Positions 1,032 through 36,209 of a stretch of DNA of 64,000 nucleotides are shown piece after piece. How positions within the stretch are numbered: the stretch's first letter is position 1; each line of letters begins with the position of its first letter. The position numbers were made by a program, and so were the translations under genes. The notes beneath the pieces were generated by a model. The model did no database searches. It was not told the origin of the DNA and saw only the letters and a list, made by a program, of their open reading frames with translations. The DNA comes from Piromyces finnis finn (Eukaryota > Fungi > Neocallimastigomycota): positions 682,001-746,000 of the forward strand of contig MCFH01000007.1 in assembly GCA_002104945.1 (NCBI GenBank), read 5' to 3'.

Positions 1032-3008
1032 TTATTCTTGTTCGACGTTTTCAGTGAACCATTCAGCAAGGTATGTAAGAGAATCCTTTGGAATACGAGT
1101 AAGTTCCTTGTCATTGTAGAAGTCAATGTAGGTCATACCGAAACGAGTTTCGTAACCATTTTCCCATTCAAAGTTATCAATTAAAGACCAGGCCATGTAA
1201 CCACGAACATCAACACCATCTTCGACATAGGCAAGACGAAGGTTTTCAAGGTATTGCTTGTACCAGTCAATTCTGTAAGTATCGTGGAGAATGGTTCCTT
1301 CAATGTTGCTTTCATCTTCAATAATAGATTCATCGTAAGCATCAGCATATTCTTCCTTACCAATGGACTTGAAGTAGTCAATGGTAACTTGATCATTGGC
1401 ACGACTAACCTTGTAGTTTGGTTGAGCACAACCATTTTCGGTAATAATGATACCGTTCTTAAGAATGCTCTTGTAACGGTTGTATAACCAGTTAAGACCA
1501 ACACGAATAGTTGGACCATACTTGGTGTTCCATGATGAACCGGCTTGTGAACCAAGAGTTGGTGGAATACAAACCCATCCTGGAGCACGGCCTCTACAGT
1601 TATCATCCCACATATCCTTCTTGGAGTTTTCGTAGCTGGCTTCTTCTTCAGTTGGTGGTTCAATGAGTTTACCATCTTCATCCTTGGCTTGTTCAGCCCA
1701 GTGAGCAGTGTAGGTGTTCCAACCTAAGAAGTCGGATGATGATCCCTTTAAGAGCTTCTTTTCTTCAGCTGTGAAGACTGGCATATCCTTACCCATTCTT
1801 TGCTTGACAGATTCTGGGTAGTCACCAGTCATTGGTGGATCAGAGTACCAACCAATACGGAATTCAGCGGCTAAGTTGGCGTACTTCTTGTTGTTTTCTA
1901 ATTCTTCTGGTGTGGTGTTTTCATCTTCCCATGGAATTTGAGCTTCACCATCAACGGTAATACCAATAAGACCCTTTTGCTTCTTTTGGAACTTCTTACG
2001 GTAAACATTGACAGCCTTAGCGTGGGCAATAAGAATGTTGTGTGAACACCAGACTTCTTCTAATCTTTGTGGAGCACGGTCAGCTGGAAGAACTTCTGCT
2101 CCCTTGTAGTATTGAGATGGACCAATTTCGTAGGAACAACCTCCTTCTAAATCAAGTCCAGTAGTGTCGTTTTGGAGCTTACGTGGTGCTTCACCAGTAC
2201 ATCTGTATGGAGCTTTACCTGGTCCATTCTTGTAACCACCAACACAGTTAACCCATGGTTCGTTAATGGTGATCCATCCCTTAACACGGTCACCAAAACG
2301 TTCGAAACAGAATTCGGCGTATTTGGCGAAATCATCTTGTGAACGGTAATCTAACCAACCACCGTACTTTTCGTGAAGAGCATATGGAAGATCCCAGTGG
2401 TAAAGAGTAGCTAATGGAGTAATGTCGTTTTCAATAAGAGTATCGATCATCATATCGTAGTATTCGGCACCCTTTTCGTTAACATTCCATTTACCGTTAA
2501 CCTTCTTAGCAACACCATCTGGGAAAAGACGAGACCATGAGATGGAGAAACGGTAGTGGTTAGCCTTCATGATTTTCATCATTTTAACATCTTCGTCGAA
2601 CTTGTGGTATGAATCACAAGCAACATTACCGTTAGTGGAATCTGGGTTAGTTCTGTCACCAGATTCGACGTTCTTTGGGTAAAGATGGGTGAAGTAATCC
2701 CAAACGGATTCACCACGACCATCGGTATCCCAAGCACCTTCAACTTGGTAAGCAGCGGTAGCAGCACCCCACTTGAAACTAGCTGGGAGTTTACCCTTTG
2801 GAGCTTCAGCATCAGACTTTTCATCGGCGGAGTCAATGTCATCGGCAATTGGTTCATCAACATTAGCAGCTTCATCATCAGAAGCAATGTTACCATCGGC
2901 AGCTGGAGCGTTAACATCAGTGGTAACATCATCAGCTGGAGCCTTGACAATACACTTCTTAGCAGCAGTAACAGCTAATAAAGTAGTGAAAATAGTAAGA
3001 GACTTCAT
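1032..3008 (-). CDS. cel1A: Secreted GH1 beta-glucosidase (Cel1A/BglA type of anaerobic fungi), copy 1, 658 aa
   Basis: Signal peptide MKSLTIFTTLLAVTAA and an acidic linker. GH1 motifs: FKWGAATAAYQVEG, YRFSISWSR, TLYHWDLP, acid/base TINEP, nucleophile ITENG, WSLIDNFEW..GY..RFG. Intronless with strong codon bias. Confidence 0.95.
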   Translation of the reverse strand: MKSLTIFTTLLAVTAAKKCIVKAPADDVTTDVNAPAADGNIASDDEAANVDEPIADDIDSADEKSDAEAPKGKLPASFKWGAATAAYQVEGAWDTDGRGESVWDYFTHLYPKNVESGDRTNPDSTNGNVACDSYHKFDEDVKMMKIMKANHYRFSISWSRLFPDGVAKKVNGKWNVNEKGAEYYDMMIDTLIENDITPLATLYHWDLPYALHEKYGGWLDYRSQDDFAKYAEFCFERFGDRVKGWITINEPWVNCVGGYKNGPGKAPYRCTGEAPRKLQNDTTGLDLEGGCSYEIGPSQYYKGAEVLPADRAPQRLEEVWCSHNILIAHAKAVNVYRKKFQKKQKGLIGITVDGEAQIPWEDENTTPEELENNKKYANLAAEFRIGWYSDPPMTGDYPESVKQRMGKDMPVFTAEEKKLLKGSSSDFLGWNTYTAHWAEQAKDEDGKLIEPPTEEEASYENSKKDMWDDNCRGRAPGWVCIPPTLGSQAGSSWNTKYGPTIRVGLNWLYNRYKSILKNGIIITENGCAQPNYKVSRANDQVTIDYFKSIGKEEYADAYDESIIEDESNIEGTILHDTYRIDWYKQYLENLRLAYVEDGVDVRGYMAWSLIDNFEWENGYETRFGMTYIDFYNDKELTRIPKDSLTYLAEWFTENVEQE

Positions 3009-4733
3009 CTTAAATTAATATTATATTAAATTATATATTTTTATTAATTATAATAATAAATAATTTATTCCAATAATAATTTTTTCCTTATCAAAAGGAT
3101 AGTTTTTTAAAATTTTGGAATTATTTTTTTCTTTTATATGATTTTTTTTTTTTGAATTTTAATATAGATATTTAATATATTATATTAAAATAAATCTATT
3201 TTTATCCTAGTGTAAACATTTTATTTTATTATAAACTTTAACTTCATTGTTTCTATAAAATCTATAAAATATTTCATATTAAATGAAAAGATAATTTACT
3301 TGTGAAACTTCAAAAAAAACAAAATTAAAATTAATTCAAAAATAATAAAATTTGTCAAATCATTTAAAATTTAATAATTTCTTAATTAGAAAAAAAAATT
3401 CATCTGTTCTCATTTATTAACTTTTGTATTTGCTTTATATTATATTTTCATTAGTTATTTTTAAATTACTGAATAATAGGGAATTGTAATATTAAAAATG
3501 ATATTCTTAATTATTTTTAAATTACTAAATATTGGGAATTGTGATATTATAAACGCGATATTAAAATCAGTACAATAATTATGCTAATAAATATTTGTAT
3601 AATCAACTAATGAATATTAAACTTTATAATATTAATATTATATTTAAATTTTTTATTTTCATATTCTTTATCAATTTAAAAATAATTAATAATGCAAATC
3701 TAAATAATCATAATTTTAAATAATAATATAGTAAATATTAAACTATCTTCTTAGTAAATATTAAACATTAGAATAATTGAAATTGTAATCCAAAGTAATT
3801 ACATAATATGCTTCATTTTGTTGTTACAAGGATAAAATTATAATATTAATGATTTCTTTTATTTAATACAATATAATTATAAAATAATTTCATTATTTTA
3901 TTATCTTGTATTAGTAATGTAATAAATTAGTTTTTATTACATATAACAAAATATTATTATTTAATAATAATAACAACAATAATAATAACAATAATAGTAA
4001 TAATAATAATAATTTTACATATGAAAAATATTATTTATATATTAAAATAGTAATTTTTAAATTGTGTGGATTCTTATTGTAATTTTTAAGTTACAATTAT
4101 ACCAATAAAAATCAAAATATCTATTATTAGCTTCAAATATTATGTATAATAATTTGGAAAGGTATAAATAGTTTTCATTTATTTAATAATGAAAGAAAGA
4201 ATTTTGATAGCTACTCTAATTATATTTATATTTATTAAATTAATTTATAAAAAAAACTTTATATACTAGTTAAACCTAAACCTGGGCTATTTATATCTAT
4301 ATTTAAATTACATTTTAACAATATTATTTAATCTAAATTTATAATACTACACTATTTAGTTTTAACTTATTATAAATTTAGATTATTAACAAGTACAAGC
4401 AATTTTAAGTTTAAGAGATTTATATATTAAATAATATATTTAGGAGAAAATTTAATTTTAACTATTCTATTTATTTAACTTTTTACAATTCTTCTAATAT
4501 ATGAATTTTATATTATATAAATCAAATTTTGATATTAATTGATTTTTTCATATAAATATCTTGGAAGTTTTCCAAATTTTTTAAAAATCATACCTTTTGA
4601 TAAGGCTTTATTCTATATTATAATTTAATTTAAAAAAAATTATATATTATTATTTTTGCTTATTAGTTATAAATAATAATTATTTATATTTAAATAATTT
4701 AATAAATTTTAATTAATATAAAAATATATAAAA

Positions 4734-6707
4734 ATGAAGTCTCTTACTATTTTCACTACTTTATTAGCTGTTACTGCTGCTAAGAAGTGTATTGTCAAGG
4801 CTCCAGCTGATGACGTTACTGATGTTAACGCTCCAGCTGCCGATGGTAACATTGCTTCTGATGATGAAGCTGCAAATGTTGATGAACCAATTGCCGATGA
4901 CATTGACTCCGCCGATGAAAAGTCTGATGCTGAAGCTCCAAAGGGTAAACTCCCAGCTAGTTTCAAGTGGGGTGCTGCTACCGCTGCTTACCAAGTTGAA
5001 GGTGCTTGGGATACCGATGGTCGTGGTGAATCCGTTTGGGATTACTTCACCCATCTTTACCCAAAGAACGTCGAATCTGGTGACAGAACTAACCCAGATT
5101 CCACTAACGGTAATGTTGCTTGTGATTCATACCACAAGTTCGACGAAGATGTTAAAATGATGAAAATCATGAAGGCTAACCACTACCGTTTCTCCATCTC
5201 ATGGTCTCGTCTTTTCCCAGATGGTGTTGCTAAGAAGGTTAACGGTAAATGGAATGTTAACGAAAAGGGTGCCGAATACTACGATATGATGATCGATACT
5301 CTTATTGAAAACGACATTACTCCATTAGCTACTCTTTACCACTGGGATCTTCCATATGCTCTTCACGAAAAGTACGGTGGTTGGTTAGATTACCGTTCAC
5401 AAGATGATTTCGCCAAATACGCCGAATTCTGTTTCGAACGTTTTGGTGACCGTGTTAAGGGATGGATCACCATTAACGAACCATGGGTTAACTGTGTTGG
5501 TGGTTACAAGAATGGACCAGGTAAAGCTCCATACAGATGTACTGGTGAAGCACCACGTAAGCTCCAAAACGACACTACCGGACTTGATTTAGAAGGAGGT
5601 TGTTCCTACGAAATTGGTCCATCTCAATACTACAAGGGAGCAGAAGTTCTTCCAGCTGACCGTGCTCCACAAAGATTAGAAGAAGTCTGGTGTTCACACA
5701 ACATTCTTATTGCCCACGCTAAGGCTGTCAATGTTTACCGTAAGAAGTTCCAAAAGAAGCAAAAGGGTCTTATTGGTATTACCGTTGATGGTGAAGCTCA
5801 AATTCCATGGGAAGATGAAAACACCACACCAGAAGAATTAGAAAACAACAAGAAGTACGCCAACTTAGCCGCTGAATTCCGTATTGGTTGGTACTCTGAT
5901 CCACCAATGACTGGTGACTACCCAGAATCCGTCAAGCAAAGAATGGGTAAGGATATGCCAGTCTTCACAGCTGAAGAAAAGAAGCTCTTAAAGGGATCAT
6001 CATCCGACTTCTTAGGTTGGAACACCTACACTGCTCACTGGGCTGAACAAGCCAAGGATGAAGATGGTAAACTCATTGAACCACCAACTGAAGAAGAAGC
6101 CAGCTACGAAAACTCCAAGAAGGATATGTGGGATGATAACTGTAGAGGCCGTGCTCCAGGATGGGTTTGTATTCCACCAACTCTTGGTTCACAAGCCGGT
6201 TCATCATGGAACACCAAGTATGGTCCAACTATTCGTGTTGGTCTTAACTGGTTATACAACCGTTACAAGAGCATTCTTAAGAACGGTATCATTATTACCG
6301 AAAATGGTTGTGCTCAACCAAACTACAAGGTTAGTCGTGCCAATGATCAAGTTACCATTGACTACTTCAAGTCCATTGGTAAGGAAGAATATGCTGATGC
6401 TTACGATGAATCTATTATTGAAGATGAAAGCAACATTGAAGGAACCATTCTCCACGATACTTACAGAATTGACTGGTACAAGCAATACCTTGAAAACCTT
6501 CGTCTTGCCTATGTCGAAGATGGTGTTGATGTTCGTGGTTACATGGCCTGGTCTTTAATTGATAACTTTGAATGGGAAAACGGTTACGAAACTCGTTTCG
6601 GTATGACCTACATTGACTTCTACAATGACAAGGAACTTACTCGTATTCCAAAGGATTCTCTTACATACCTTGCTGAATGGTTCACTGAAAACGTCGAACA
6701 AGAATAA
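4734..6707 (+). CDS. cel1A: Secreted GH1 beta-glucosidase, copy 2, 657 aa (divergent partner of copy 1)
   Basis: Protein identical to copy 1 except for a 1-aa indel in the linker (DDVTDV vs DDVTTDV). Confidence 0.95.
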   Translation: MKSLTIFTTLLAVTAAKKCIVKAPADDVTDVNAPAADGNIASDDEAANVDEPIADDIDSADEKSDAEAPKGKLPASFKWGAATAAYQVEGAWDTDGRGESVWDYFTHLYPKNVESGDRTNPDSTNGNVACDSYHKFDEDVKMMKIMKANHYRFSISWSRLFPDGVAKKVNGKWNVNEKGAEYYDMMIDTLIENDITPLATLYHWDLPYALHEKYGGWLDYRSQDDFAKYAEFCFERFGDRVKGWITINEPWVNCVGGYKNGPGKAPYRCTGEAPRKLQNDTTGLDLEGGCSYEIGPSQYYKGAEVLPADRAPQRLEEVWCSHNILIAHAKAVNVYRKKFQKKQKGLIGITVDGEAQIPWEDENTTPEELENNKKYANLAAEFRIGWYSDPPMTGDYPESVKQRMGKDMPVFTAEEKKLLKGSSSDFLGWNTYTAHWAEQAKDEDGKLIEPPTEEEASYENSKKDMWDDNCRGRAPGWVCIPPTLGSQAGSSWNTKYGPTIRVGLNWLYNRYKSILKNGIIITENGCAQPNYKVSRANDQVTIDYFKSIGKEEYADAYDESIIEDESNIEGTILHDTYRIDWYKQYLENLRLAYVEDGVDVRGYMAWSLIDNFEWENGYETRFGMTYIDFYNDKELTRIPKDSLTYLAEWFTENVEQE

Positions 6708-12942: not shown

Positions 12943-13448
12943 TAATATAAATAGGAAAATATATCTTTTTATATTGCCTTTATATTTTAATATTTATTTA
13001 CTTTAAATTAAATAAAGATAGTAATTATATATAATATTTTTTATAATAAATCTTTTGTTTAATTACTCGATCATCTATATTCATTAAATTGTGAAATATT
13101 ATATACTATTATATACTATTATTTTATTATATTATTTTACTATTTTATAGGTATCATGACTTATTTTTACTTCAATTTTATTTAGTGAATAAAGGTAATA
13201 AAATAAATTATAACAATAATTATAGGCATAAATTAATATTAAATTAATGCAAGTAAATTTTTTTAATAAAAAATATTTAAATAAATTATTGTTATTTTAT
13301 TTTTTATTATTTTCTAGAATAAAGAAATTTACTTATTTTTAATAAATAAGCTAAAATAAAATTAATATATTTTAAACTGTATATCTTGTTTATATAATAA
13401 TAATAATAAAAATAATAATAATATTTAAAATTGTTATTGTAATTTAGA

Positions 13449-13862
13449 TATAATGTATTCTAGTGATTTTAATTAAAGTAAGAAAGCCACTATTATACTA
13501 AAGTATAATAATTTTATTTGACTTCCAATGAGACACCGAGCCAAAGATCAAAATTTTATCATGGAACAAAATTATGAAATCTATTGGTTGCGCTGGCCCT
13601 CCTGGCCTGTCATACTATTTCTTCAGCATTGACACTCTTGGATGTTGCTTCAAACCTTTTGAACATTGACCATTGCTGGCCAATATAACAAAAGGCATGA
13701 TTCTGGTTAGAAGTTCCGCGGTTACCGTCAAGAATGGTGTTCCTTCGTTAGTGCCCGATTGAACCTGACACTTGCAAAGTTCTTTCCATTCCCTTGAATT
13801 GTAATTGATACTGTTAAAACTTTTTCCCCAAGAAGGAATTTAGATATTTTATTGCACACACT
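13449..13862 (-). mobile_element. 3' remnant of LINE family B
   Basis: The reverse complement matches 44375-44790 (ttccttcttgggg...gaaggaacaccattcttgacggtaaccgcggaac...ggccaggagggccagcgcaacc...ttactttaattaaaa). Confidence 0.9.
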
Positions 13863-14314: not shown

Positions 14315-16288
14315 TTATTCTTGTTCGACGTTTTCAGTGAACCATTCAGCAAGGTATGTAAGAGAATCCTTTGGAATACGAGTAAGTTCCTTGTCATTGT
14401 AGAAGTCAATGTAGGTCATACCGAAACGAGTTTCGTAACCGTTTTCCCATTCAAAGTTATCAATTAAAGACCAGGCCATGTAACCACGGACATCAACACC
14501 ATCTTCGACATAGGCAAGACGAAGGTTTTCAAGGTATTGCTTGTACCAGTCAATTCTGTAAGTATCGTGGAGAATGGTTCCTTCAATGTTGCTTTCATCT
14601 TCAATAATAGATTCATCGTAAGCATCAGCATATTCTTCCTTACCAATGGACTTGAAGTAGTCAATGGTAACTTGATCATTGGCACGACTAACCTTGTAGT
14701 TTGGTTGAGCACAACCGTTTTCGGTAATAATGATACCGTTCTTAAGAATGCTCTTGTAACGGTTGTATAACCAGTTAAGACCAACACGAATAGTTGGACC
14801 ATACTTGGTGTTCCATGATGAACCGGCTTGTGAACCAAGAGTTGGTGGAATACAAACCCATCCTGGAGCACGGCCTCTACAGTTATCATCCCACATATCC
14901 TTCTTGGAGTTTTCGTAGCTGGCTTCTTCTTCAGTTGGTGGTTCAATGAGTTTACCATCTTCATCCTTGGCTTGTTCAGCCCAGTGAGCAGTGTAGGTGT
15001 TCCAACCTAAGAAATCGGATGATGATCCCTTTAAGAGCTTCTTTTCTTCAGCTGTGAAGACTGGCATATCCTTACCCATTCTTTGCTTGACGGATTCTGG
15101 GTAGTCACCAGTCATTGGTGGATCAGAGTACCAACCAATACGGAATTCAGCGGCTAAGTTGGCGTACTTCTTGTTGTTTTCTAATTCTTCTGGTGTGGTG
15201 TTTTCATCTTCCCATGGAATTTGAGCTTCACCATCAACGGTAATACCAATAAGACCCTTTTGCTTCTTTTGGAACTTCTTACGGTAAACATTGACAGCCT
15301 TAGCGTGGGCAATAAGAATGTTGTGTGAACACCAGACTTCTTCTAATCTTTGTGGAGCACGGTCAGCTGGAAGAACTTCTGCTCCCTTGTAGTATTGAGA
15401 TGGACCAATTTCGTAGGAACAACCTCCTTCTAAATCAAGTCCAGTAGTGTCGTTTTGGAGCTTACGTGGTGCTTCACCAGTACATCTGTATGGAGCTTTA
15501 CCTGGTCCATTCTTGTAACCACCAACACAGTTAACCCATGGTTCGTTAATGGTGATCCATCCCTTAACACGGTCACCAAAACGTTCGAAACAGAATTCGG
15601 CGTATTTGGCGAAATCATCTTGTGAACGGTAATCTAACCAACCACCGTACTTTTCGTGAAGAGCATATGGAAGATCCCAGTGGTAAAGAGTAGCTAATGG
15701 AGTAATGTCGTTTTCAATAAGAGTATCGATCATCATATCGTAGTATTCGGCACCCTTTTCGTTAACATTCCATTTACCGTTAACCTTCTTAGCAACACCA
15801 TCTGGGAAAAGACGAGACCATGAGATGGAGAAACGGTAGTGGTTAGCCTTCATGATTTTCATCATTTTAACATCTTCGTCGAACTTGTGGTATGAATCAC
15901 AAGCAACATTACCGTTAGTGGAATCTGGGTTAGTTCTGTCACCAGATTCGACGTTCTTTGGGTAAAGATGGGTGAAGTAATCCCAAACGGATTCACCACG
16001 ACCATCGGTATCCCAAGCACCTTCAACTTGGTAAGCAGCAGTAGCAGCACCCCACTTGAAACTAGCTGGGAGTTTACCCTTTGGAGCTTCAGCATCAGAC
16101 TTTTCATCAGCGGAGTCAATGTCATCGGCAATTGGTTCATCAACATTAGCAGCTTCATCATCAGAAGCAATGTTACCATCGGCAGCTGGAGCGTTAACAT
16201 CAGTAACGTCATCAGCTGGAGCCTTGACAATACACTTCTTAGCAGCAGTAACAGCTAATAAAGTAGTGAAAATAGTAAGAGATTTCAT
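14315..16288 (-). CDS. cel1A: Secreted GH1 beta-glucosidase, copy 3, 657 aa
   Basis: Protein identical to copy 2; all GH1 motifs intact. Confidence 0.95.
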   Translation of the reverse strand: MKSLTIFTTLLAVTAAKKCIVKAPADDVTDVNAPAADGNIASDDEAANVDEPIADDIDSADEKSDAEAPKGKLPASFKWGAATAAYQVEGAWDTDGRGESVWDYFTHLYPKNVESGDRTNPDSTNGNVACDSYHKFDEDVKMMKIMKANHYRFSISWSRLFPDGVAKKVNGKWNVNEKGAEYYDMMIDTLIENDITPLATLYHWDLPYALHEKYGGWLDYRSQDDFAKYAEFCFERFGDRVKGWITINEPWVNCVGGYKNGPGKAPYRCTGEAPRKLQNDTTGLDLEGGCSYEIGPSQYYKGAEVLPADRAPQRLEEVWCSHNILIAHAKAVNVYRKKFQKKQKGLIGITVDGEAQIPWEDENTTPEELENNKKYANLAAEFRIGWYSDPPMTGDYPESVKQRMGKDMPVFTAEEKKLLKGSSSDFLGWNTYTAHWAEQAKDEDGKLIEPPTEEEASYENSKKDMWDDNCRGRAPGWVCIPPTLGSQAGSSWNTKYGPTIRVGLNWLYNRYKSILKNGIIITENGCAQPNYKVSRANDQVTIDYFKSIGKEEYADAYDESIIEDESNIEGTILHDTYRIDWYKQYLENLRLAYVEDGVDVRGYMAWSLIDNFEWENGYETRFGMTYIDFYNDKELTRIPKDSLTYLAEWFTENVEQE

Positions 16289-17115: not shown

Positions 17116-17177
<62 letters not shown>

Positions 17178-17197
17178 TAGAATATTAATAATAATTA

Positions 17198-17253
<56 letters not shown>

Positions 17254-17356: not shown

Positions 17357-17412
<56 letters not shown>

Positions 17413-25962: not shown

Positions 25963-28365
25963 TTTTTTTTTTTTTAGACTAGGAAGAGAATATACATCTT
26001 TTATTTATTTACTTATTTAATTAGTGATATTATATAATATTAGGTGATAATACATATTGATATTGATATAATAAATAATAAATAAAAATAATAAAATATA
26101 TATAAATAAAAATATAAATATAAAAAAATATAAAATAATTATTTAAGTTGCATAAAAGTTCAATGAACTCTACAATTTGTACTGTGTGGGATTGGTCCCT
26201 ACCTAATAAATTAAATGAAATAAAAAAAAGAAGTAACATCAGGTATGATAGTGTGGTGTCCACTAAACTCTCCCATGAGCTCATAATGTTTTCATTCGAA
26301 TTTGAGGAAATACTAACATTGAACCCTGTGTACGGAACATTGGAAATGTTCCTTTGCCATATCAGTACGACGTCGGCGCTCTTGATTACGTTAGGTGTCT
26401 TACTAAACCTATCAAAAAGTAGCTTCATAGAGCTACTAATGATAGGGATTGTTTTAGTAAGAAAAGCCGCGAGACCCTCTACATATGGAACATGAGACCC
26501 CGATGAACTGTAAAGCTGTTCATTCAAATGTCTTTGTTCCGCCTTATCGATTTGTAGCTCATCATAAGCTAAAGTTCCACCAAGAAGGAACGTAAAAATA
26601 TAGTTATAAATTGTTTTTCTTACTTCCGTTTCGGGGAGTAAGTATGTGATGAATTGATTCTTATATTTATTGTAAAAAAGGGTAAAAAGATCGTCAAGAA
26701 AGCTAAGTGAAGAAGCTCTGTATTCAGAGAATGCAGAACATTCTAATATCCAATGATAAAAAGATTGTTCGTCATATCCGCAACATGGACTGACACGAGG
26801 GCAGTCAGGAGTAACTCTATTACTGGCAATAGCAATTCGGGTAGTATTTTCATAACCGCATCGAATACGAATAATCCAGGTAATTCCTAAATTTAAGTAA
26901 GGTTTGTTGAGACCGATATGCATTAGGCGATTTGAATTAAGGAATTTGTTGTTAGTATATCTGAGGGCTTTACTTCCATTATTTAAGCTACTATTATTCC
27001 AATAATGTTCTCTAATATCTTTAGTACTTTTAATATTAATTTTCATAAGCTTCTTATGTAGTGAATAAGATTCTTTGGCCCAAGAGTAATGAGACATGGG
27101 AGGAATAGATCGGACGAGATCTTTAATAATACAATTTGATTTTCTCCATTTAACAAAGCATTTCAATTGTTGCGCAGCACAAATACCTGAAAGGGTAGGA
27201 ATCTTCATATCTCTTGTAAGAGCATACAGACTAATAAATGAATTTCGTTCAAAAACAAAATCTTTGTTATTAAAACTTTTATTGTGAAAGCTATTGACAC
27301 TCCATAAAACAGCAGTATTGGTAAGAGATTGGACTCTTCTAGTTCTATTTTTGTTGGAACCAAGTAAAGGAGCATAATAAGAGACTTTGCTTAAAATATA
27401 AGAATGAATTACTATATTTTTTAAGCCAATAGGAACACAATTGTTGGTGAGGAAGTTCCTAAAAGAGAATAAAGATTTCTGAACTTTTTTGTACATACTA
27501 GACAGAATAGGAGTCAGAGAAAGATCTTCGTCGAATGGGATTCCAAGATAAGTATAACAAGAAACCTTTGGAAATGAGTACATACCGATGTAAAATGTTG
27601 GGTCGACATAACTAGGGGATCTATTAAAGTTAATAGGTTTAACAACAATAGTTGCACATTTATTTATTCCAAGAGACATTTTATTTAAATTAGCCCAATC
27701 AAGGACTAGATTGAGCATCTTTTGAAGGTTCTTCTTACTAGGAGCAATCAAAACAATGTCATCAGCGAAAAGGCCACCACAACAACGTTTATTTCCTAAG
27801 CTAACTCCAAGCCTTTCACATTTATTTAAAATATCATTGATAAAGAGGTTAAAAAGTATAGGAGAAAGAGGACATCCTTGTCTTACACCACGGTTTATAG
27901 GGAATTTATTGGAAAGCATATCCAAAAAACGTGCACGAGCTTTAGAGGTAGAGTAGAGATTATTGAGAAAATCAAAACATTTACCACGTATACCTAATTT
28001 ATATAACTTTGTAAGGATATTAAAAATAGGAACTGAGTCGTATGCTTTTTTAAGTTCTAGAAAGGCGACATAAGTGACTTTTCCTTTAAATTTTCTTCTT
28101 TGACAGAATTCTCTAATGGAAACAAATAAGCTAATACATTCTTCTTTATTGCGAAAACCAAATTGTTCAGATCTTATAAAATTATGAAGAAGAGCATACT
28201 TTGAAATTCTATCAGTTAAAATTTTTGAAATGATTTTAAGACCTACATTGATGAGAGAAATACCACGATAATTATTACAGTCTGAAAGATCGCCTTTCTT
28301 TGGAATAGAAACAATGGAAGCAGAGTTCCATTTCAAAGGAAAGGAACCATTCCTAATTTTATTAA
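25963..28365 (-). mobile_element. 5'-truncated non-LTR retrotransposon (LINE family A) with poly(A) tail and 15-bp TSD
   Basis: ATTAATTTAGTTTAT at 25948-25962 and 28366-28380 brackets the element. A poly(T) on the + strand ends at 25975. Contains the RT ORF. Confidence 0.92.
26030..28336 (-). pseudogene. LINE ORF2 fragment: RT domain plus C-terminal Cys/His zinc finger, no endonuclease
   Basis: Motifs IVSIPKKGDLSDCNNYRGISL, QFGFR, FLELKKAYDSV, GVRQGCPLSPILFNLFIND, FADD, YLGIPF and PCC...HWILEC. The listed start is a TTG at the truncation, not a true start. Confidence 0.9.
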
Positions 28366-29486
28366 ATTAATTTAGTTTATAAGTATTAAGTTTTCTTTTT
28401 TTTTTTTTTGGAAAGAAATTTATATTAATTTCTATCAGAAACTAGCAACAATGCATAGAATTTAAATAGCATATACTTCACACGTTGTTTCTATTATGAT
28501 TTTAAACAATAATAACTAAAAATATTAAAAAACAAATAATCTATAGTATTTATCTTGAAGTTAAATTTAAAATATGTAATAACAAACTAATCTTGTAAAA
28601 AAATAGTTATATTATTATTTTTAAAGTGAAAAGATGTAGAAAAATAAAGTAATTTATTATAAATAAAATATTCAATATAACTAACTAACTAACTAACTAA
28701 ATAAATATTTAACAGAAAAATAAAGTAAAAAAAGTCAACTAATAGTAATGACTTTCTTTTTTTTTTAAAATATTTATTTTAAATAGCATTTTGTTTTTAT
28801 TTTTATTTTTAATAGATTTTTATTTAATTTAATATCTTTTTTTTTTTTTTGTTTGGTTTTTAACAAGTGAAAAGCTTTTTTTTTTGTATACTAATAAATT
28901 TAATTGGCAATATTTCAATATCCCCTTACTACTTTTAAACCAAAGAAAAAAAAGAAAAAAGGCATTATAAATTAAAAGATAATAACACACACCTAAAAAA
29001 GGTGATTTTTCAAAAAAAAAAAAAAAAAAAAAATTATTAAATTCTATGGAAAAAAAATATAAATATATATTTATAATAAAAGATTTAAAAAAGGAAAATA
29101 GAAAATTCGAAAATTCAATAATATTTAAGTGATTTGAAAAATTAATGATTATCCTAGATTTTTGGCGCTATTAGCCAGACTTTTTGGCCAAAAAATTATA
29201 ATAGTATTAAAACCTGACCTGTATGACCTTAATCTCATCCATTTTAGTTTTAAGTTAATAAAAATATAGAATTTTGAAGGTCAAATAATCCTTTTTTTTT
29301 TATATATTAAATTTAATTGAATTTTATTACTTTTTTTTATATATTAAATTTTTAAAGATTTTTTATACAATGATTATAACATAATTACATTTAATATAAA
29401 TATTATTTTATATAATAATAATTATACACATATTTTTTTTATTTCTTATTCTATAATTATTTTTTTGGTATTAAAATGTTTATTGT

Positions 29487-31463
29487 TTATTCTTGTTCGA
29501 CATTTTCAGTGAACCATTCAGCAAGGTATGTAAGAGAATCCTTTGGAATACGAGTAAGTTCCTTGTCATTGTAGAAGTCAATGTAGGTCATACCGAAACG
29601 AGTTTCGTAACCGTTTTCCCATTCAAAGTTATCAATTAAAGACCAGGCCATGTAACCACGGACATCAACACCATCTTCGACATAGGCAAGACGAAGGTTT
29701 TCAAGGTATTGCTTGTACCAGTCAATTCTGTAAGTATCGTGGAGAATGGTTCCTTCAATGTTGCTTTCATCTTCAATAATAGATTCATCGTAAGCATCAG
29801 CATATTCTTCCTTACCAATGGACTTGAAGTAGTCAATGGTAACTTGATCATTGGCACGACTAACCTTGTAGTTTGGTTGAGCACAACCGTTTTCGGTAAT
29901 AATGATACCGTTCTTAAGAATGCTCTTGTAACGGTTGTATAACCAGTTAAGACCAACACGAATAGTTGGACCATACTTGGTGTTCCATGATGAACCGGCT
30001 TGTGAACCAAGAGTTGGTGGAATACAAACCCATCCTGGAGCACGGCCTCTACAGTTATCATCCCACATATCCTTCTTGGAGTTTTCGTAGCTGGCTTCTT
30101 CTTCAGTTGGTGGTTCAATGAGTTTACCATCTTCATCCTTGGCTTGTTCAGCCCAGTGAGCAGTGTAGGTGTTCCAACCTAAGAAGTCGGATGATGATCC
30201 CTTTAAGAGCTTCTTTTCTTCAGCTGTGAAGACTGGCATATCCTTACCCATTCTTTGCTTGACGGATTCTGGGTAGTCACCAGTCATTGGTGGATCAGAG
30301 TACCAACCAATACGGAATTCAGCGGCTAAGTTGGCGTACTTCTTGTTGTTTTCTAATTCTTCTGGTGTGGTGTTTTCATCTTCCCATGGAATTTGAGCTT
30401 CACCATCAACGGTAATACCAATAAGACCCTTTTGCTTCTTTTGGAACTTCTTACGGTAAACATTGACAGCCTTAGCGTGGGCAATAAGAATGTTGTGTGA
30501 ACACCAGACTTCTTCTAATCTTTGTGGAGCACGGTCAGCTGGAAGAACTTCTGCTCCCTTGTAGTATTGAGATGGACCAATTTCGTAGGAACAACCTCCT
30601 TCTAAATCAAGTCCAGTAGTGTCGTTTTGGAGCTTACGTGGTGCTTCACCAGTACATCTGTATGGAGCTTTACCTGGTCCATTCTTGTAACCACCAACAC
30701 AGTTAACCCATGGTTCGTTAATGGTGATCCATCCCTTAACACGGTCACCAAAACGTTCGAAACAGAATTCGGCGTATTTGGCGAAATCATCTTGTGAACG
30801 GTAATCTAACCAACCACCGTACTTTTCGTGAAGAGCATATGGAAGATCCCAGTGGTAAAGAGTAGCTAATGGAGTAATGTCGTTTTCAATAAGAGTATCG
30901 ATCATCATATCGTAGTATTCGGCACCCTTTTCGTTAACATTCCATTTACCGTTAACCTTCTTAGCAACACCATCTGGGAAAAGACGAGACCATGAGATGG
31001 AGAAACGGTAGTGGTTAGCCTTCATGATTTTCATCATTTTAACATCTTCGTCGAACTTGTGGTATGAATCACAAGCAACATTACCATTAGTGGAATCTGG
31101 ATTAGTTCTGTCACCAGATTCGACGTTCTTTGGGTAAAGATGGGTGAAGTAATCCCAAACGGATTCACCACGACCATCGGTATCCCAAGCACCTTCAACT
31201 TGGTAAGCAGCGGTAGCAGCACCCCACTTGAAACTAGCTGGGAGTTTACCCTTTGGAGCTTCAGCATCAGACTTTTCATCGGCGGAGTCAATGTCATCGG
31301 CAATTGGTTCATCAACATTAGCAGCTTCATCATCAGAAGCAATGTTACCATCGGCAGCTGGAGCGTTAACATCAGTGGTAACATCATCAGCTGGAGCCTT
31401 GACAATACATTTCTTAGCGGCAGTAACAGCTAATAAAGTAGTGAAAATAGTAAGAGACTTCAT
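29487..31463 (-). CDS. cel1A: Secreted GH1 beta-glucosidase, copy 5, 658 aa
   Basis: Protein identical to copy 1. Confidence 0.95.
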   Translation of the reverse strand: MKSLTIFTTLLAVTAAKKCIVKAPADDVTTDVNAPAADGNIASDDEAANVDEPIADDIDSADEKSDAEAPKGKLPASFKWGAATAAYQVEGAWDTDGRGESVWDYFTHLYPKNVESGDRTNPDSTNGNVACDSYHKFDEDVKMMKIMKANHYRFSISWSRLFPDGVAKKVNGKWNVNEKGAEYYDMMIDTLIENDITPLATLYHWDLPYALHEKYGGWLDYRSQDDFAKYAEFCFERFGDRVKGWITINEPWVNCVGGYKNGPGKAPYRCTGEAPRKLQNDTTGLDLEGGCSYEIGPSQYYKGAEVLPADRAPQRLEEVWCSHNILIAHAKAVNVYRKKFQKKQKGLIGITVDGEAQIPWEDENTTPEELENNKKYANLAAEFRIGWYSDPPMTGDYPESVKQRMGKDMPVFTAEEKKLLKGSSSDFLGWNTYTAHWAEQAKDEDGKLIEPPTEEEASYENSKKDMWDDNCRGRAPGWVCIPPTLGSQAGSSWNTKYGPTIRVGLNWLYNRYKSILKNGIIITENGCAQPNYKVSRANDQVTIDYFKSIGKEEYADAYDESIIEDESNIEGTILHDTYRIDWYKQYLENLRLAYVEDGVDVRGYMAWSLIDNFEWENGYETRFGMTYIDFYNDKELTRIPKDSLTYLAEWFTENVEQE

Positions 31464-34232
31464 TTTTGTATATTTTATGTATTTTATTTTAAATGAATTA
31501 TTTTATATATTATGTATTATATATTATTATATATTATTTATTATTTATTATTTAATATAATTTTAAATATCTTAAAATAAACTTAGATTAATATCTATTT
31601 TATTTTATTTATTATTTTATTTTATTTTTTTTTTTTGATAATAATTTTATAATATTTCTATGAATGAATTATGAAATTCTATATAAAGAATATTATTTTA
31701 TAAAATTATAATGAAGAAAAAAAATAAAAATAGGAAAAATGATGAATATTTATATGTATTTTTTTTGGTAATAATGTATAATACTAATGATTAATAGAAT
31801 AATAGTATATGAATATACAATAGTATATACGTATATACAATATATAATAGTAAAAAAATATAATTATGATTTATTAATTATTTATTAAGAATTTATATTC
31901 TATTTATTATTTATTAACCCTTTTTTTTTATATTATTATTATTTAAATCTAACTATAATAAATAACAATATTTAATAGTTAATCATTATGGTTTTAATAT
32001 TTTAAATGTGACATTAGCATATTAACCACCACCACCATCCTTTAAATTTTATTAAATATTTACAATGAAATAATATAAAATGAAAATTGAATCATTTTAA
32101 TGGTCAACTCTGTTAAATATAAAATAAAATATAAAATAAAATAATTTGCTAAAAATAAATTAGTTTTAAACCTCTTTCAATATAAAAGTTCAACAAATTT
32201 TAATATTTTAAAATAAGGTATGATTTGTTAAAACATTATTCTATAATATTTTTTATACTTTATCTTTACTAGTATTATATATATATATATTTTTTATTTA
32301 ATTCATTTAATCGTATCTTTACTAGTATTATATATATATATATATTTTATTTAATTCATTTAATCGTTAATTAAATAATAATTATATTTTTTCCCTCTTA
32401 AAACCTAAAATTTTGAGAAATTTTCAAATATATCATTTCATTTATAATAAAGATATTTTATTTATTAATATTTTTTTCTTCTTAAATACTATATAGTATT
32501 AATAGTATTAATATTTAATATTAATGAAATATATAATCAGTTTTATTTAAATTTTTTTATATTTTAATCATTTTTAAAAAAAAAAACAACATATAATTGA
32601 TATTATAAGAAAGAAATGATATTAATTGTTCATTTTGGAATACAAAATATAAAAGTAAGCACAAAAAATAATTAAAATAACAATATTATAATGTAAATTG
32701 TTTTAAAAAACAATAATTTTTTCATTTTTTAATTAAATAATAATATTGTTATTAAAGGAATTAAAATATTTTAATTATTTTATAGTGTAACATAGAAAAA
32801 TATTAATTGAAACAAAAGCTTTTTACTTATAATAATATTATTAAATTAATATTTCAAAAGGTACAATTTTTATTTAACTTTAGGTAACAGTGTTATCTAA
32901 TTTATTTTTAAGTTTCTTTTTCTGTATTTTATTAAATATAAAAGTTTAATATATAAACAGGATTTCATTGGTAGTGATTATTGAACTAATATTAACACTT
33001 GTTGAACTAACATTAACAGTATTGGGATATTGTACAAATATACTCATCATATTATGTCTAACTATTTTATGCATTAAAAAAAATTAATAATTAAATGTAA
33101 TACTCATTTAAGTAATACTATAGAATAATAGTTTATATAGGAACATCATAAAAAAATAAAAATATAAAAGTATTTTATTTTTCAATTATACCGCAATTAT
33201 TAAGAAGAGGTAAAAATATTTTAATGACCGCATTAAATAATTTCAAAAAATATTATTTTTTACAATTATTTCTTTTATTTAATTTCCTTTTTAGTTAAAT
33301 ATTTGAATATATTTTTTAAATTTTTCAAGGTTAAGGATTAAAAGATTTAATTACCTTCTTTTATTTAATTATTATTTAATTAACGATTAAATGAATTAAA
33401 TAAAAAATATATATATATATAATACTAGTAAAGATAAAGTATAAAAAATATTATAGAATAATGTTTTAACAAATCATACCTTATTTTAAAATATTAAAAT
33501 TTGTTGAACTTTTATATTGAAAGAGGTTTAAAACTAATTTATTTTTAGCAAATTATTTTATTTTATATTTTATTTTATATTTAACAGAGTTGACCATTAA
33601 AATGATTCAATTTTCATTTTATATTATTTCATTGTAAATATTTAATAAAATTTAAAGGATGGTGGTGGTGGTTAATATGCTAATGTCACATTTAAAATAT
33701 TAAAACCATAATGATTAACTATTAAATATTGTTATTTATTATAGTTAGATTTAAATAATAATAATATAAAAAAAAAGGGTTAATAAATAATAAATAGAAT
33801 ATAAATTCTTAATAAATAATTAATAAATCATAATTATATTTTTTTACTATTATATATTGTATATACGTATATACTATTGTATATTCATATACTATTATTC
33901 TATTAATCATTAGTATTATACATTATTACCAAAAAAAATACATATAAATATTCATCATTTTTCCTATTTTTATTTTTTTTCTTCATTATAATTTTATAAA
34001 ATAATATTCTTTATATAGAATTTCATAATTCATTCATAGAAATATTATAAAATTATTATCAAAAAAAAAAATAAAATAAAATAATAAATAAAATAAAATA
34101 GATATTAATCTAAGTTTATTTTAAGATATTTAAAATTATATTAAATAATAAATAATAAATAATATATAATAATATATAATACATAATATATAAAATAATT
34201 CATTTAAAATAAAATACATAAAATATACAAAA

Positions 34233-36209
34233 ATGAAGTCTCTTACTATTTTCACTACTTTATTAGCTGTTACTGCCGCTAAGAAATGTATTGTCAAGGC
34301 TCCAGCTGATGATGTTACCACTGATGTTAACGCTCCAGCTGCCGATGGTAACATTGCTTCTGATGATGAAGCTGCTAATGTTGATGAACCAATTGCCGAT
34401 GACATTGACTCCGCCGATGAAAAGTCTGATGCTGAAGCTCCAAAGGGTAAACTCCCAGCTAGTTTCAAGTGGGGTGCTGCTACCGCTGCTTACCAAGTTG
34501 AAGGTGCTTGGGATACCGATGGTCGTGGTGAATCCGTTTGGGATTACTTCACCCATCTTTACCCAAAGAACGTCGAATCTGGTGACAGAACTAATCCAGA
34601 TTCCACTAATGGTAATGTTGCTTGTGATTCATACCACAAGTTCGACGAAGATGTTAAAATGATGAAAATCATGAAGGCTAACCACTACCGTTTCTCCATC
34701 TCATGGTCTCGTCTTTTCCCAGATGGTGTTGCTAAGAAGGTTAACGGTAAATGGAATGTTAACGAAAAGGGTGCCGAATACTACGATATGATGATCGATA
34801 CTCTTATTGAAAACGACATTACTCCATTAGCTACTCTTTACCACTGGGATCTTCCATATGCTCTTCACGAAAAGTACGGTGGTTGGTTAGATTACCGTTC
34901 ACAAGATGATTTCGCCAAATACGCCGAATTCTGTTTCGAACGTTTTGGTGACCGTGTTAAGGGATGGATCACCATTAACGAACCATGGGTTAACTGTGTT
35001 GGTGGTTACAAGAATGGACCAGGTAAAGCTCCATACAGATGTACTGGTGAAGCACCACGTAAGCTCCAAAACGACACTACTGGACTTGATTTAGAAGGAG
35101 GTTGTTCCTACGAAATTGGTCCATCTCAATACTACAAGGGAGCAGAAGTTCTTCCAGCTGACCGTGCTCCACAAAGATTAGAAGAAGTCTGGTGTTCACA
35201 CAACATTCTTATTGCCCACGCTAAGGCTGTCAATGTTTACCGTAAGAAGTTCCAAAAGAAGCAAAAGGGTCTTATTGGTATTACCGTTGATGGTGAAGCT
35301 CAAATTCCATGGGAAGATGAAAACACCACACCAGAAGAATTAGAAAACAACAAGAAGTACGCCAACTTAGCCGCTGAATTCCGTATTGGTTGGTACTCTG
35401 ATCCACCAATGACTGGTGACTACCCAGAATCCGTCAAGCAAAGAATGGGTAAGGATATGCCAGTCTTCACAGCTGAAGAAAAGAAGCTCTTAAAGGGATC
35501 ATCATCCGACTTCTTAGGTTGGAACACCTACACTGCTCACTGGGCTGAACAAGCCAAGGATGAAGATGGTAAACTCATTGAACCACCAACTGAAGAAGAA
35601 GCCAGCTACGAAAACTCCAAGAAGGATATGTGGGATGATAACTGTAGAGGCCGTGCTCCAGGATGGGTTTGTATTCCACCAACTCTTGGTTCACAAGCCG
35701 GTTCATCATGGAACACCAAGTATGGTCCAACTATTCGTGTTGGTCTTAACTGGTTATACAACCGTTACAAGAGCATTCTTAAGAACGGTATCATTATTAC
35801 CGAAAACGGTTGTGCTCAACCAAACTACAAGGTTAGTCGTGCCAATGATCAAGTTACCATTGACTACTTCAAGTCCATTGGTAAGGAAGAATATGCTGAT
35901 GCTTACGATGAATCTATTATTGAAGATGAAAGCAACATTGAAGGAACCATTCTCCACGATACTTACAGAATTGACTGGTACAAGCAATACCTTGAAAACC
36001 TTCGTCTTGCCTATGTCGAAGATGGTGTTGATGTCCGTGGTTACATGGCCTGGTCTTTAATTGATAACTTTGAATGGGAAAACGGTTACGAAACTCGTTT
36101 CGGTATGACCTACATTGACTTCTACAATGACAAGGAACTTACTCGTATTCCAAAGGATTCACTTACATACCTTGCTGAATGGTTCACTGAAAATGTTGAA
36201 CAAGAATAA
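34233..36209 (+). CDS. cel1A: Secreted GH1 beta-glucosidase, copy 6, 658 aa (divergent partner of copy 5)
   Basis: Protein identical to copies 1 and 5. Confidence 0.95.
   Translation: MKSLTIFTTLLAVTAAKKCIVKAPADDVTTDVNAPAADGNIASDDEAANVDEPIADDIDSADEKSDAEAPKGKLPASFKWGAATAAYQVEGAWDTDGRGESVWDYFTHLYPKNVESGDRTNPDSTNGNVACDSYHKFDEDVKMMKIMKANHYRFSISWSRLFPDGVAKKVNGKWNVNEKGAEYYDMMIDTLIENDITPLATLYHWDLPYALHEKYGGWLDYRSQDDFAKYAEFCFERFGDRVKGWITINEPWVNCVGGYKNGPGKAPYRCTGEAPRKLQNDTTGLDLEGGCSYEIGPSQYYKGAEVLPADRAPQRLEEVWCSHNILIAHAKAVNVYRKKFQKKQKGLIGITVDGEAQIPWEDENTTPEELENNKKYANLAAEFRIGWYSDPPMTGDYPESVKQRMGKDMPVFTAEEKKLLKGSSSDFLGWNTYTAHWAEQAKDEDGKLIEPPTEEEASYENSKKDMWDDNCRGRAPGWVCIPPTLGSQAGSSWNTKYGPTIRVGLNWLYNRYKSILKNGIIITENGCAQPNYKVSRANDQVTIDYFKSIGKEEYADAYDESIIEDESNIEGTILHDTYRIDWYKQYLENLRLAYVEDGVDVRGYMAWSLIDNFEWENGYETRFGMTYIDFYNDKELTRIPKDSLTYLAEWFTENVEQE

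What the first reader, a model, noticed from the sequence alone, without database searches (positions are those of the whole stretch)
1032..36209. Six near-identical Cel1A-type beta-glucosidases arranged as three head-to-head palindromic pairs
Seen: three (-/+) divergent pairs (1032-6707, 14315-20975, 29487-36209) with intergenic gaps of 1725, 2713 and 2769 bp, recurring every about 13-15 kb. The proteins differ by at most one indel or two residues, yet the DNA just after each stop codon is different for every copy. Known: secreted dockerin-less GH1 Cel1A is a highly expressed cellobiase of anaerobic gut fungi. Inference: this is a dosage-amplification locus whose repeating unit is an inverted gene pair, potentially driven from a bidirectional promoter region. 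It resembles palindrome-maintained ampliconic genes more than an ordinary tandem array. I do not know of this architecture being described for gut-fungal CAZymes, but I could not search.
Basis: partly seen in the sequence, partly recalled or inferred. Interest (0 to 1): 0.8.

Follow-up and report, generated by a model that had tools for sequence, protein, structure and literature searches.

The report
Six matched beta-glucosidase genes, paired head-to-head
The gut fungus Piromyces finnis carries six almost identical genes for a secreted cellobiose-splitting enzyme, set as three back-to-back pairs; copying between the genes most likely keeps them alike while the DNA around them has drifted apart, a familiar process seen here in an unusual, recurring layout.

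Summary
Six intronless GH1 genes sit exactly where stated, in the order - + - + - +. Their coding DNA is 99.2-99.9% identical, and each has its own flanks.

The organism is Piromyces finnis. The nearest named relative is Cel1C of Piromyces sp. E2, at 82% identity.

Likeness stops about 13 nt before the ATG and 2-7 nt after the stop. Only pair 3 is a palindrome beyond the coding region, with 2.9-kb near-perfect arms and a 975-bp spacer.

Best reading: these are old copies kept alike by gene conversion under strong purifying selection. Exchange is most frequent between the two partners of a pair.

- Synonymous divergence (dS) is 0.005-0.03, against flanks that no longer align.
- A 105-nt upstream relic is only 77% identical.
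- 18 of 78 site pairs fail the four-gamete test.
- 9 of 13 informative sites are private to one pair.

The inverted layout is not needed for the likeness. Four GH1 genes on another contig, all on one strand, behave the same way.

I found no shared bidirectional promoter and no repeated 13-15-kb unit. In Piromyces sp. E2 the related cluster is in direct orientation.

Earlier notes of this scan had flagged GH48 and PFL palindromes elsewhere in this genome. I confirmed those and added GH6 and GH11. This is a new member of a known kind, of moderate interest.

The parts
1032..3008 (-). g1, GH1 beta-glucosidase gene, 658 aa, pair 1
   Evidence: ORF; PF00232 at E 1e-124; NEP and TENG catalytic motifs visible in the alignment
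3009..4733 (.). Pair 1 head-to-head spacer, 1725 bp, not palindromic and unrelated to the other spacers
   Evidence: No significant self or cross matches; upstream alignment scores at background level
4734..6707 (+). g2, GH1 gene, 657 aa, pair 1
   Evidence: 5 synonymous differences from g1
14315..16288 (-). g3, GH1 gene, 657 aa, pair 2
16289..19001 (.). Pair 2 head-to-head spacer, 2713 bp
   Evidence: only weak low-complexity likeness between the two upstream sides
16600..16702 (-). Relic upstream block of g3 (-312 to -414), about 77% identical to a block upstream of g5 and g6
   Evidence: blastn E 4e-15; alignment A2; its 23-nt core occurs 3 times against 0 expected
19002..20975 (+). g4, GH1 gene, 657 aa, pair 2; the only copy with amino-acid changes
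20933..20963 (+). Patch at the 3' end of g4 that escaped homogenisation: a cluster of 5 private changes, two of them matching the group B (outgroup) state
   Evidence: Variable-site table; comparison with group B
29480..32387 (-). Left arm of the pair 3 palindrome: g5 (29487-31463) plus about 0.9 kb upstream; holds a tandem duplication of about 50 bp near its inner edge
   Evidence: Inverted repeat of 2891 bp at 99.2%; 100-nt windows at 98-100% identity; inner edge examined
32388..33362 (.). Unique central spacer of pair 3, about 975 bp
33363..36216 (+). Right arm of the pair 3 palindrome: about 0.9 kb upstream plus g6 (34233-36209); the outer edge is 7 nt past the stop codon
32087..32193 (-). 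Relic upstream block of g5 (-624 to -730); its mirror copy lies at 33504-33610 upstream of g6
13361..13862 (-). 3' fragment of a non-LTR retrotransposon, 453 bp downstream of g3
   Evidence: 85-93% identical to the copies at 21666-22155, 44376-44849 and 45776-46196; element identified
21487..22198 (+). 3' fragment of the same retrotransposon family, 512 bp downstream of g4, mirroring the fragment beside g3
26030..28336 (-). Retrotransposon ORF with a reverse transcriptase domain, between pairs 2 and 3
   Evidence: PF00078 at E 2e-35

Best explanation
This is a lineage-specific cluster of six working genes for a secreted GH1 beta-glucosidase without a dockerin, in Piromyces finnis. The copies are old. 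Their coding sequences are kept nearly identical by repeated non-reciprocal copying (gene conversion), together with strong purifying selection on the protein. Conversion tracts can start and end only where the copies still match. The flanks have therefore drifted until they no longer align, while the coding sequences stay alike. Exchange is most frequent between the two genes of a head-to-head pair, less frequent between pairs, and rare between this cluster and the second GH1 cluster on another contig. Pair 3 shows a recent event that made 2.9 kb identical, including 0.9 kb upstream of each gene. The head-to-head layout probably arose by inverted duplication. A younger GH11 array in the same genome still shows nested palindromes of that kind. 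Shown here: the anatomy, the contrast between coding sequence and flanks, the mosaic sites, and the recurrence of the layout. Inferred: conversion as the cause, dosage as the benefit, and inverted duplication as the origin.
For: Identity and organism. PF00232 matches at E 1e-124 and is the only domain. The genome has 56.46 Mb in 232 contigs, and the paralogue on the 749,539-bp contig is named Piromyces finnis.

Coding sequence against flanks. Among the six copies dS is 0.005-0.031 and dN is 0, except in g4. By contrast, 400 bp upstream and downstream score like unrelated AT-rich DNA for nearly all gene pairs. The one surviving upstream relic, shared by g3 and g5/g6, is 76.6% identical (K about 0.28). 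That is roughly ten times the dS between the same genes.

Mosaicism. 18 of 78 pairs of informative sites fail the four-gamete test. The last 45 nt of g4 keep outgroup-like states that the other copies have lost.

A visible ectopic tract. Gene b3 on contig C151 carries the group A state at 5 diagnostic sites within its first 60 nt. Orthologues of its own clade begin with the group B form.

Relatives. In the tree the copies cluster by species, and group A is sister to the Piromyces sp. E2 Cel1C clade.

Synonymous sites are not frozen: dS between groups A and B is 0.35.

All copies are selected: 20 synonymous against 2 replacement changes, p=3e-12.

Partner preference. There are 2-7 differences within pairs against 8-15 between pairs, and 9 of 13 informative sites are private to one pair.

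Origin by inverted duplication. In the GH11 array on C175, one whole pair is an inverted copy of the next (5652 bp, 97.4%) around inner 2.1-kb arms.
Against: No reads, expression data or population data were available, so copy number, dosage and ongoing conversion are all inferred. Codon bias is strong (Nc 29), and selection on synonymous sites could lower dS somewhat. AT-rich intergenic DNA may also evolve faster than synonymous sites through slippage, which would exaggerate the contrast. The relic block is short (about 105 nt) and occurs in only three of the six upstream regions. With 13 informative sites, some incompatibilities could come from recurrent mutation. The outer edge of the pair 3 palindrome lies only 7 nt past the stop codon, and I cannot derive that from a simple conversion model between inverted repeats.
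Confidence: 0.75

Rival explanations
1. The six copies come from very recent duplications of the coding region. No gene conversion is needed; the likeness simply reflects youth.
For: dS is very low, 0.005-0.03. Pair 3 clearly records a recent event covering 2.9 kb.
Against: Recent DNA duplication copies flanks too, yet ten of the twelve flanks are unalignable. In pair 3, 0.8 kb of the same kind of AT-rich DNA stays 100% identical at comparable age, so flanks do not decay that fast. The relic block is 77% identical against a dS of 0.025-0.03. The sites are mosaic. Duplication boundaries would have to fall at the ATG and at the stop codon eleven times over.
Confidence: 0.07
2. Homogenisation runs through RNA. 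cDNA made from the abundant intronless GH1 mRNA by the genome's active LINE reverse transcriptases recombines with the genomic copies, so only transcribed sequence is made uniform.
For: The likeness is confined almost exactly to the coding region. The genes are intronless. LINE copies and a reverse transcriptase ORF lie inside the array. Uniformity also reaches unlinked copies: b4 lies 240 kb away, and the A-to-B tract crosses contigs.
Against: No 3' UTR or poly(A) likeness follows any stop codon. In pair 3 the identity runs 0.9 kb upstream, well beyond any likely transcript start. Ordinary DNA-templated conversion explains the same boundaries.
Confidence: 0.1
3. This is an assembly or polishing artefact. 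Fewer real copies exist, or more divergent ones, and the consensus step made them look alike.
For: Near-identical repeats and palindromes are classic trouble spots for assemblers. I had no reads to check.
Against: Every copy has unique flanks on both sides and its own set of variants. The locus lies in the middle of a 1.25-Mb contig. The pair 3 arms are separated by a unique 975-bp spacer and differ by an indel, a 50-bp duplication and 2 substitutions, unlike a fold-back read artefact. No duplicate contig holds these genes. The three protein variants are all on record from the public annotation.
Confidence: 0.05
4. Selection alone, on the protein and on codon usage, keeps old copies alike without any exchange between them.
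For: Codon bias is strong (Nc 29, GC3 0.37, the highest in the window). There are no replacement changes in five of the six copies.
Against: The same gene family reaches dS 0.35 between groups A and B in the same genome, so synonymous sites do change. Selection cannot create shared derived synonymous variants within pairs, four-gamete failures, or the A-type tract in b3.
Confidence: 0.03

Closest known systems
Cel1 beta-glucosidase genes of Piromyces sp. E2 (Cel1C, AAP30745.1) and Bgl1 of Orpinomyces sp. PC-2
   Same: Same enzyme family, with the same build: a signal-like start, an acidic linker, and a GH1 domain with insertions. Cel1C is 82% identical and its clade is sister to this cluster. 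Piromyces sp. E2 also keeps several copies on one scaffold. From memory, not checked here: Harhangi and co-workers (2002-2003) described a highly expressed Cel1A and genomic clones with clustered, near-identical cellulase genes.
   Different: On the E2 scaffold all five GH1 pieces lie on one strand. The E2 copies are more diverged from one another. E2 and metagenome relatives carry a glutamate-dehydrogenase gene fragment upstream of the GH1 gene, which is absent here.
Identical head-to-head EF-1alpha gene pairs of Plasmodium and Babesia
   Same: Two identical coding sequences of a highly expressed gene lie head to head in an AT-rich genome, while the intergenic DNA between them varies (PMC12984197).
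   Different: Those are single pairs whose intergenic region is a proven two-way promoter. Here there are three pairs in a row with 1.7-2.8-kb spacers whose promoter activity is untested, plus exchange between pairs.
Palindromes with arm-to-arm gene conversion on mammalian sex chromosomes
   Same: Inverted arms are kept more than 99% alike by exchange between the arms, and they hold dosage-sensitive, multi-copy genes (abstracts of PMC3403216 and PMC6790999).
   Different: Those arms span tens of kilobases to megabases and include non-coding DNA, in a region without meiotic recombination. Here the homogenised tract is one coding sequence of 2 kb, except in pair 3, and copies in direct orientation are homogenised equally well.
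Concerted evolution of hsp70 gene clusters in flies
   Same: Inverted and direct copies of an intronless, heavily expressed gene are homogenised over the coding region while the flanks diverge. This is recalled from the Drosophila literature; the abstract of PMC3071340 covers related hsp70 clusters.
   Different: A different gene and organism. I did not read those papers in full, so the comparison rests partly on memory.

Membership tests
Glycoside hydrolase family 1 (beta-glucosidase) | Match to the GH1 profile over the whole catalytic domain | tested here: met
   PF00232 at E 1e-124, 416.8 bits against a cut-off of 22.6
Glycoside hydrolase family 1 (beta-glucosidase) | Two catalytic glutamates, in the NEP and TENG motifs | tested here: met
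   N249-E250-P251 and T523-E524-N525-G526 are invariant in all six copies. That these motifs define the family is established knowledge.
Glycoside hydrolase family 1 (beta-glucosidase) | Hydrolysis of cellobiose or aryl beta-glucosides | not testable with these tools
   Needs an enzyme assay
Secreted, dockerin-less Cel1-type enzyme of gut fungi | No fungal dockerin (CBM10) module | tested here: met
   The Pfam scan returns GH1 only
Secreted, dockerin-less Cel1-type enzyme of gut fungi | Close kinship with the named Piromyces Cel1 proteins | tested here: met
   82% identical to Cel1C; same 90% cluster as its representative; sister clades with 80/92 support. Cel1A itself was not among the sequences retrieved.
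Secreted, dockerin-less Cel1-type enzyme of gut fungi | N-terminal signal peptide | not tested
   A hydrophobic start is visible and is conserved across relatives, but no predictor was run
Gene family under concerted evolution by gene conversion | Paralogues far more alike in the converted tract than in adjoining DNA | tested here: met
   dS 0.005-0.031 against background-level flank scores and a 77% relic block
Gene family under concerted evolution by gene conversion | Mosaic copies (phylogenetically incompatible sites) | tested here: met
   18 of 78 site pairs fail the four-gamete test; b3 carries an A-type tract
Gene family under concerted evolution by gene conversion | Paralogues group by species while the positional copies predate the species split | tested here: inconclusive
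   The copies do cluster by species, but positional orthology with E2 could not be set up: there are no shared flank markers and the E2 scaffold is full of gaps
Palindrome kept alike by arm-to-arm conversion | Inverted arms nearer to each other than to any other copy | tested here: met
   Differences within pairs are 5, 7 and 2, against 8-15 between pairs; 9 of the 10 two-against-four splits are partner pairs
Palindrome kept alike by arm-to-arm conversion | Arm identity extends over non-coding DNA of the arms | tested here: not met
   True only for pair 3. In pairs 1 and 2 identity stops at the coding sequence.
Palindrome kept alike by arm-to-arm conversion | The inverted layout is required for the uniformity | tested here: not met
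   Group B copies, in direct orientation and in one case dispersed, are 98.7-99.8% identical with unalignable flanks
Tandem amplification of an inverted-pair unit | Spacers and inter-unit DNA homologous from unit to unit | tested here: not met
   No such matches beyond the coding sequences, LINE fragments and one 105-nt relic. The younger GH11 array does show whole-pair copies, but inverted ones.
Bidirectional promoter pair | A short shared intergenic region (conventionally under 1 kb) driving both genes | tested here: not met
   The spacers are 1725, 2713 and 2769 bp. Pair 3 has two mirrored 0.9-kb upstream copies around a unique centre. Promoter activity itself is not testable here.

The most novel reading that the evidence does not exclude
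Piromyces finnis may build and keep its most heavily used genes (GH1, GH48, GH6, GH11, pyruvate formate-lyase) as head-to-head pairs and alternating arrays, through repeated, nested inverted duplication in its extremely AT-rich DNA. Head-to-head would be favoured over tail-to-tail, and conversion limited to the coding sequence would keep the copies identical. If so, this is a lineage-specific mode of gene amplification, not shared by Piromyces sp. E2 or Anaeromyces, rather than a one-off locus.
Probability: 0.35. Interest if true: 0.6.

Novelty: new member of a known kind. Interest (0 to 1): 0.4.

Why it matters
Three practical points follow for work on gut fungi.
- The main cellobiase is encoded six times over here, plus four related copies. 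Knock-outs, expression counts and copy-number estimates must allow for reads and guide RNAs that fit all copies.
- Each copy has its own upstream DNA, which gives a natural series of promoters driving the same product. The 1.7-2.8-kb spacers are candidates for two-way expression cassettes, as the EF-1alpha spacer became in malaria parasites.
- The sharp coding-sequence boundary of the likeness, seen in both inverted and direct copies, makes this genome a clean case for measuring gene-conversion tract limits and rates in an early-diverging fungus.

The wider pattern of head-to-head pairs for several highly expressed genes would say something about how this genome amplifies genes, if a full survey bears it out.

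Tried and rejected
Repeated 13-15-kb unit. Self-comparison found no likeness between spacers or between the inter-pair stretches, apart from LINE fragments and one relic block.

Shared upstream motif. The 23-nt core of the relic block occurs only upstream of g3, g5 and g6, and in none of the fetched loci.

The mirrored LINE fragments beside pair 2 as remains of a larger old palindrome. The left fragment is closer to copies 30 kb away (90-93%) than to its mirror partner (85%). Separate insertions are therefore more likely.

Retrocopies. There is no UTR or poly(A) likeness after the stop codons.

Synteny with relatives. The glutamate-dehydrogenase fragment and the Band_7 gene that flank GH1 in Piromyces sp. 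E2 and in metagenome contigs have no match in the window or in the C151 loci.

Head-to-head partners in relatives. None lies within 3.7-10 kb upstream in Piromyces sp. E2, Anaeromyces robustus or seven metagenome contigs. Two contigs instead hold a GH1 3' relic in direct orientation.

Literature. Nine full-text searches found no description of inverted gene pairs or gene conversion in anaerobic fungi. The library does not hold the 2003 Piromyces sp. E2 genomic-clone paper or the 2017 genome paper. This is therefore a weak negative.

The large protein search, structure prediction and RNA tools were not used, because the family assignment was never in doubt.


Full report
**What is there**

The window holds six open reading frames of 657-658 codons at exactly the coordinates given, in the order - + - + - +. 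The head-to-head gaps are 1725, 2713 and 2769 bp. The tail-to-tail gaps are 7.6 and 8.5 kb.

The six proteins differ by one codon (Thr29, absent in g2, g3 and g4) and by two residues near the C-terminus of g4. Each matches Pfam GH1 at E 1e-124 and no other family, so there is no dockerin. Both catalytic glutamate motifs (NEP, TENG) are invariant.

The genes are intronless and have about 43% G+C. They sit in flanks of 9-16% G+C.

**Organism and family census**

The window is C200:682001-746000 of a genome of 56.46 Mb in 232 contigs, and it lies in the middle of a 1.25-Mb contig. A paralogue on the 749,539-bp contig C151 is named as a Piromyces finnis protein.

The genome has ten full GH1 genes.
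- Group A is the six genes in this window.
- Group B is four genes on C151, 84-85% identical in protein to group A.
- All four group B genes are on the same strand. Three lie within 20 kb and one lies 240 kb away.

The nearest named protein is Cel1C of Piromyces sp. E2, at 82% identity.

**The key contrast**

Coding DNA is 99.2-99.9% identical among the six copies. Twenty-two columns carry substitutions, twenty of them at third codon positions. dS is 0.005-0.031, and dN is zero except in g4. The excess of synonymous changes (20 against 2) has p=3e-12, so all six copies are under selection.

Likeness ends about 13 nt before the ATG and 2-7 nt after the stop. I compared 400 bp upstream and downstream between all gene pairs. 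The local alignment scores fall within the range given by 92 unrelated AT-rich segments of the window. There is one strong exception, the upstream sides of g5 and g6, and a few weak upstream signals.

One real relic survives. A block of about 105 nt upstream of g3 (-312 to -414) matches a block upstream of g5 and g6 (-624 to -730) at 76.6% identity. That corresponds to K of about 0.28, roughly ten times the dS between those genes.

Pair 3 shows what young non-coding DNA looks like here. About 0.8 kb of upstream sequence is 100% identical between its arms. The unalignable flanks of the other copies are therefore old, and the coding sequences are far more alike than their age allows.

**Signs of exchange**

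Thirteen sites are informative, and 18 of the 78 site pairs fail the four-gamete test.

Nine informative sites are private to one pair: one to pair 1, three to pair 2 and five to pair 3. Partners differ at 5, 7 and 2 sites, against 8-15 between pairs.

The last 45 nt of g4 carry a cluster of private states, two of which match group B. This looks like an edge that homogenisation did not reach.

Gene b3 of group B has the group A state at five diagnostic sites in its first 60 nt. Orthologues of its own clade begin with the group B form, so this is a short tract copied between contigs.

Between groups A and B dS is 0.35, so synonymous sites are free to change.

**The inverted layout is not the cause of the likeness**

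Group B copies are in direct orientation, and one is dispersed. They are nevertheless 98.7-99.8% identical, with flanks that score at background level. Exchange is favoured between partners of a pair, but it does not depend on a palindrome.

**Pair 3**

The arms run from about 29480 to 32387 and from 36216 to 33363. They differ by two substitutions near the 3' end of the coding sequence, one single-base indel, and one tandem duplication of about 50 bp in the g5 arm. The unique centre is about 975 bp.

The outer edges lie 7 nt past the stop codons, where the older likeness also ends. I cannot derive that edge from a simple model, so I record it as unexplained.

**No repeated unit and no shared promoter**

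The spacers and the inter-pair DNA are unrelated from pair to pair. The inter-pair stretches contain the following:
- other reading frames;
- a retrotransposon ORF with a reverse transcriptase domain;
- 5'-truncated copies of a related element.

The spacers exceed the usual limit for a bidirectional promoter. In pair 3 each gene has its own mirrored upstream copy.

**Relatives**

In the protein tree group A is sister to the E2 Cel1C clade (support 80/92). Group B sits with another E2 gene, and the copies cluster by species.

On the E2 scaffold KZ151031.1 five GH1 pieces all lie on one strand. The scaffold has many gaps, so this evidence is weaker than it looks.

Anaeromyces robustus has two diverged copies 25 kb apart on one strand.

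Seven metagenome contigs show no head-to-head partner within 3.7-5.5 kb upstream. Two of them carry a direct-orientation relic, and two others show a direct repeat of a Band_7-GH1 unit.

The head-to-head layout therefore looks specific to the P. finnis lineage.

**The same layout elsewhere in this genome**

Earlier notes of this scan pointed to gene palindromes for GH48 and pyruvate formate-lyase (PFL). I checked them and looked further. The head-to-head pairs I verified are these:

| Family | Contig | Arm length (bp) | Arm identity | Note |
|---|---|---|---|---|
| GH48 | C112 | 2923 | 99.66% | |
| PFL | C175 | 3080 | 99.74% | |
| PFL | C164 | 2759 | 99.82% | |
| PFL | C180 | 2861 | 97.9% | |
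| GH6 | C153 | 1564 | 98.3% | limited to the coding sequence |

GH11 forms alternating arrays on two contigs.

In the C175 GH11 array one whole pair is an inverted copy of the next (5652 bp, 97.4%), around inner arms of 2.1 kb at 95.6-96.8%. This is a nested palindrome and a likely younger picture of how the GH1 array began.

I made a rough count over nine families. For same-family neighbours within 5 kb it gives about 13 head-to-head, 4 tail-to-tail and 17 direct pairs. The head-to-head excess over tail-to-tail has p=0.049, and the pairs are not independent, so this is a lead and not a result.

**What is known**

Identical head-to-head pairs of a highly expressed gene, with variable spacers, are known for EF-1alpha in Plasmodium and Babesia (PMC12984197). 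Arm-to-arm conversion is well known from sex-chromosome palindromes (abstracts).

The name Cel1C shows that several Cel1 genes of Piromyces sp. E2 were cloned. My memory of clustered, near-identical genes in the 2003 paper on those genomic clones could not be checked, because the library does not hold it.

I found no paper describing inverted gene pairs or gene conversion in gut fungi. The search is limited to open-access text.

**Verdict**

The likeness, however, comes from conversion limited to the coding sequence, which works in any orientation. There is no repeated unit and no evidence of a shared promoter.

This is a new member of a known kind and of moderate interest.

Noticed in passing
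G000:C175:147200-172000 (L017, L029, L030): Six genes alternate - + - + - + across two families: a PFL palindrome, then four GH11 genes. The GH11 genes form a nested palindrome, in which the whole pair is an inverted copy of the next pair (5652 bp, 97.4%).
   Followed up: partly
G000:C165:226500-254500 (L031-L033): Seven GH11 genes in the order - + - + - - -. Identities are graded from 82% to 99%, and one inner palindrome has 2565-bp arms at 99.0%.
   Followed up: partly
G000:C151:577044-577103 (first 60 nt of GH1 gene b3, in L002): A short tract with group A states in a group B gene on another contig. It changes the start of the signal peptide from the B form to the A form.
   Followed up: yes
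window 13361-13862 and 21487-22198: Two 5'-truncated retrotransposon tails mirror each other, 453 and 512 bp downstream of g3 and g4, each in the orientation of its gene. They are less alike (85%) than the left one is to distant copies (90-93%), so the symmetry may be chance.
   Followed up: partly
window 43530-46350: A tandem duplicate (1.4-kb unit, 96%) of the 3' part of a non-LTR retrotransposon. Its ORF is 36% identical to the region after the reverse transcriptase domain of the ORF at 26030-28336.
   Followed up: partly
window 9311-10939 (-): A 542-codon ORF in DNA of 16.5% G+C, with an Asn/Asp-rich repeat in the middle and no Pfam family. An ORF this long is unlikely to be chance in such AT-rich DNA.
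   Followed up: no
window 12550-12942 (+): A 130-codon ORF that ends in a hydrophobic tail like a GPI-anchor signal; no family match. It may be the last exon of a larger gene.
   Followed up: no
window 32290-32390: A tandem duplication of about 50 bp, present in the g5 arm of the pair 3 palindrome and absent from the g6 arm. It made the inner edge of the arms look more diverged than it is.
   Followed up: yes
L022 8358-8595, L024 1822-2110, L025 2998-3745: In Piromyces sp. E2 and in metagenome relatives a decayed glutamate-dehydrogenase gene fragment lies upstream of the GH1 gene. In L025 and L026 a Band_7 gene flanks GH1 on both sides, which indicates a direct tandem unit of about 7.3 kb.
   Followed up: partly
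G000:C200:746001-756000 (L021): The head-to-head pair of deacetylase-like ORFs just beyond the window shows no DNA-level likeness of 200 bp or more. It is therefore an old pair and not a homogenised one.
   Followed up: partly
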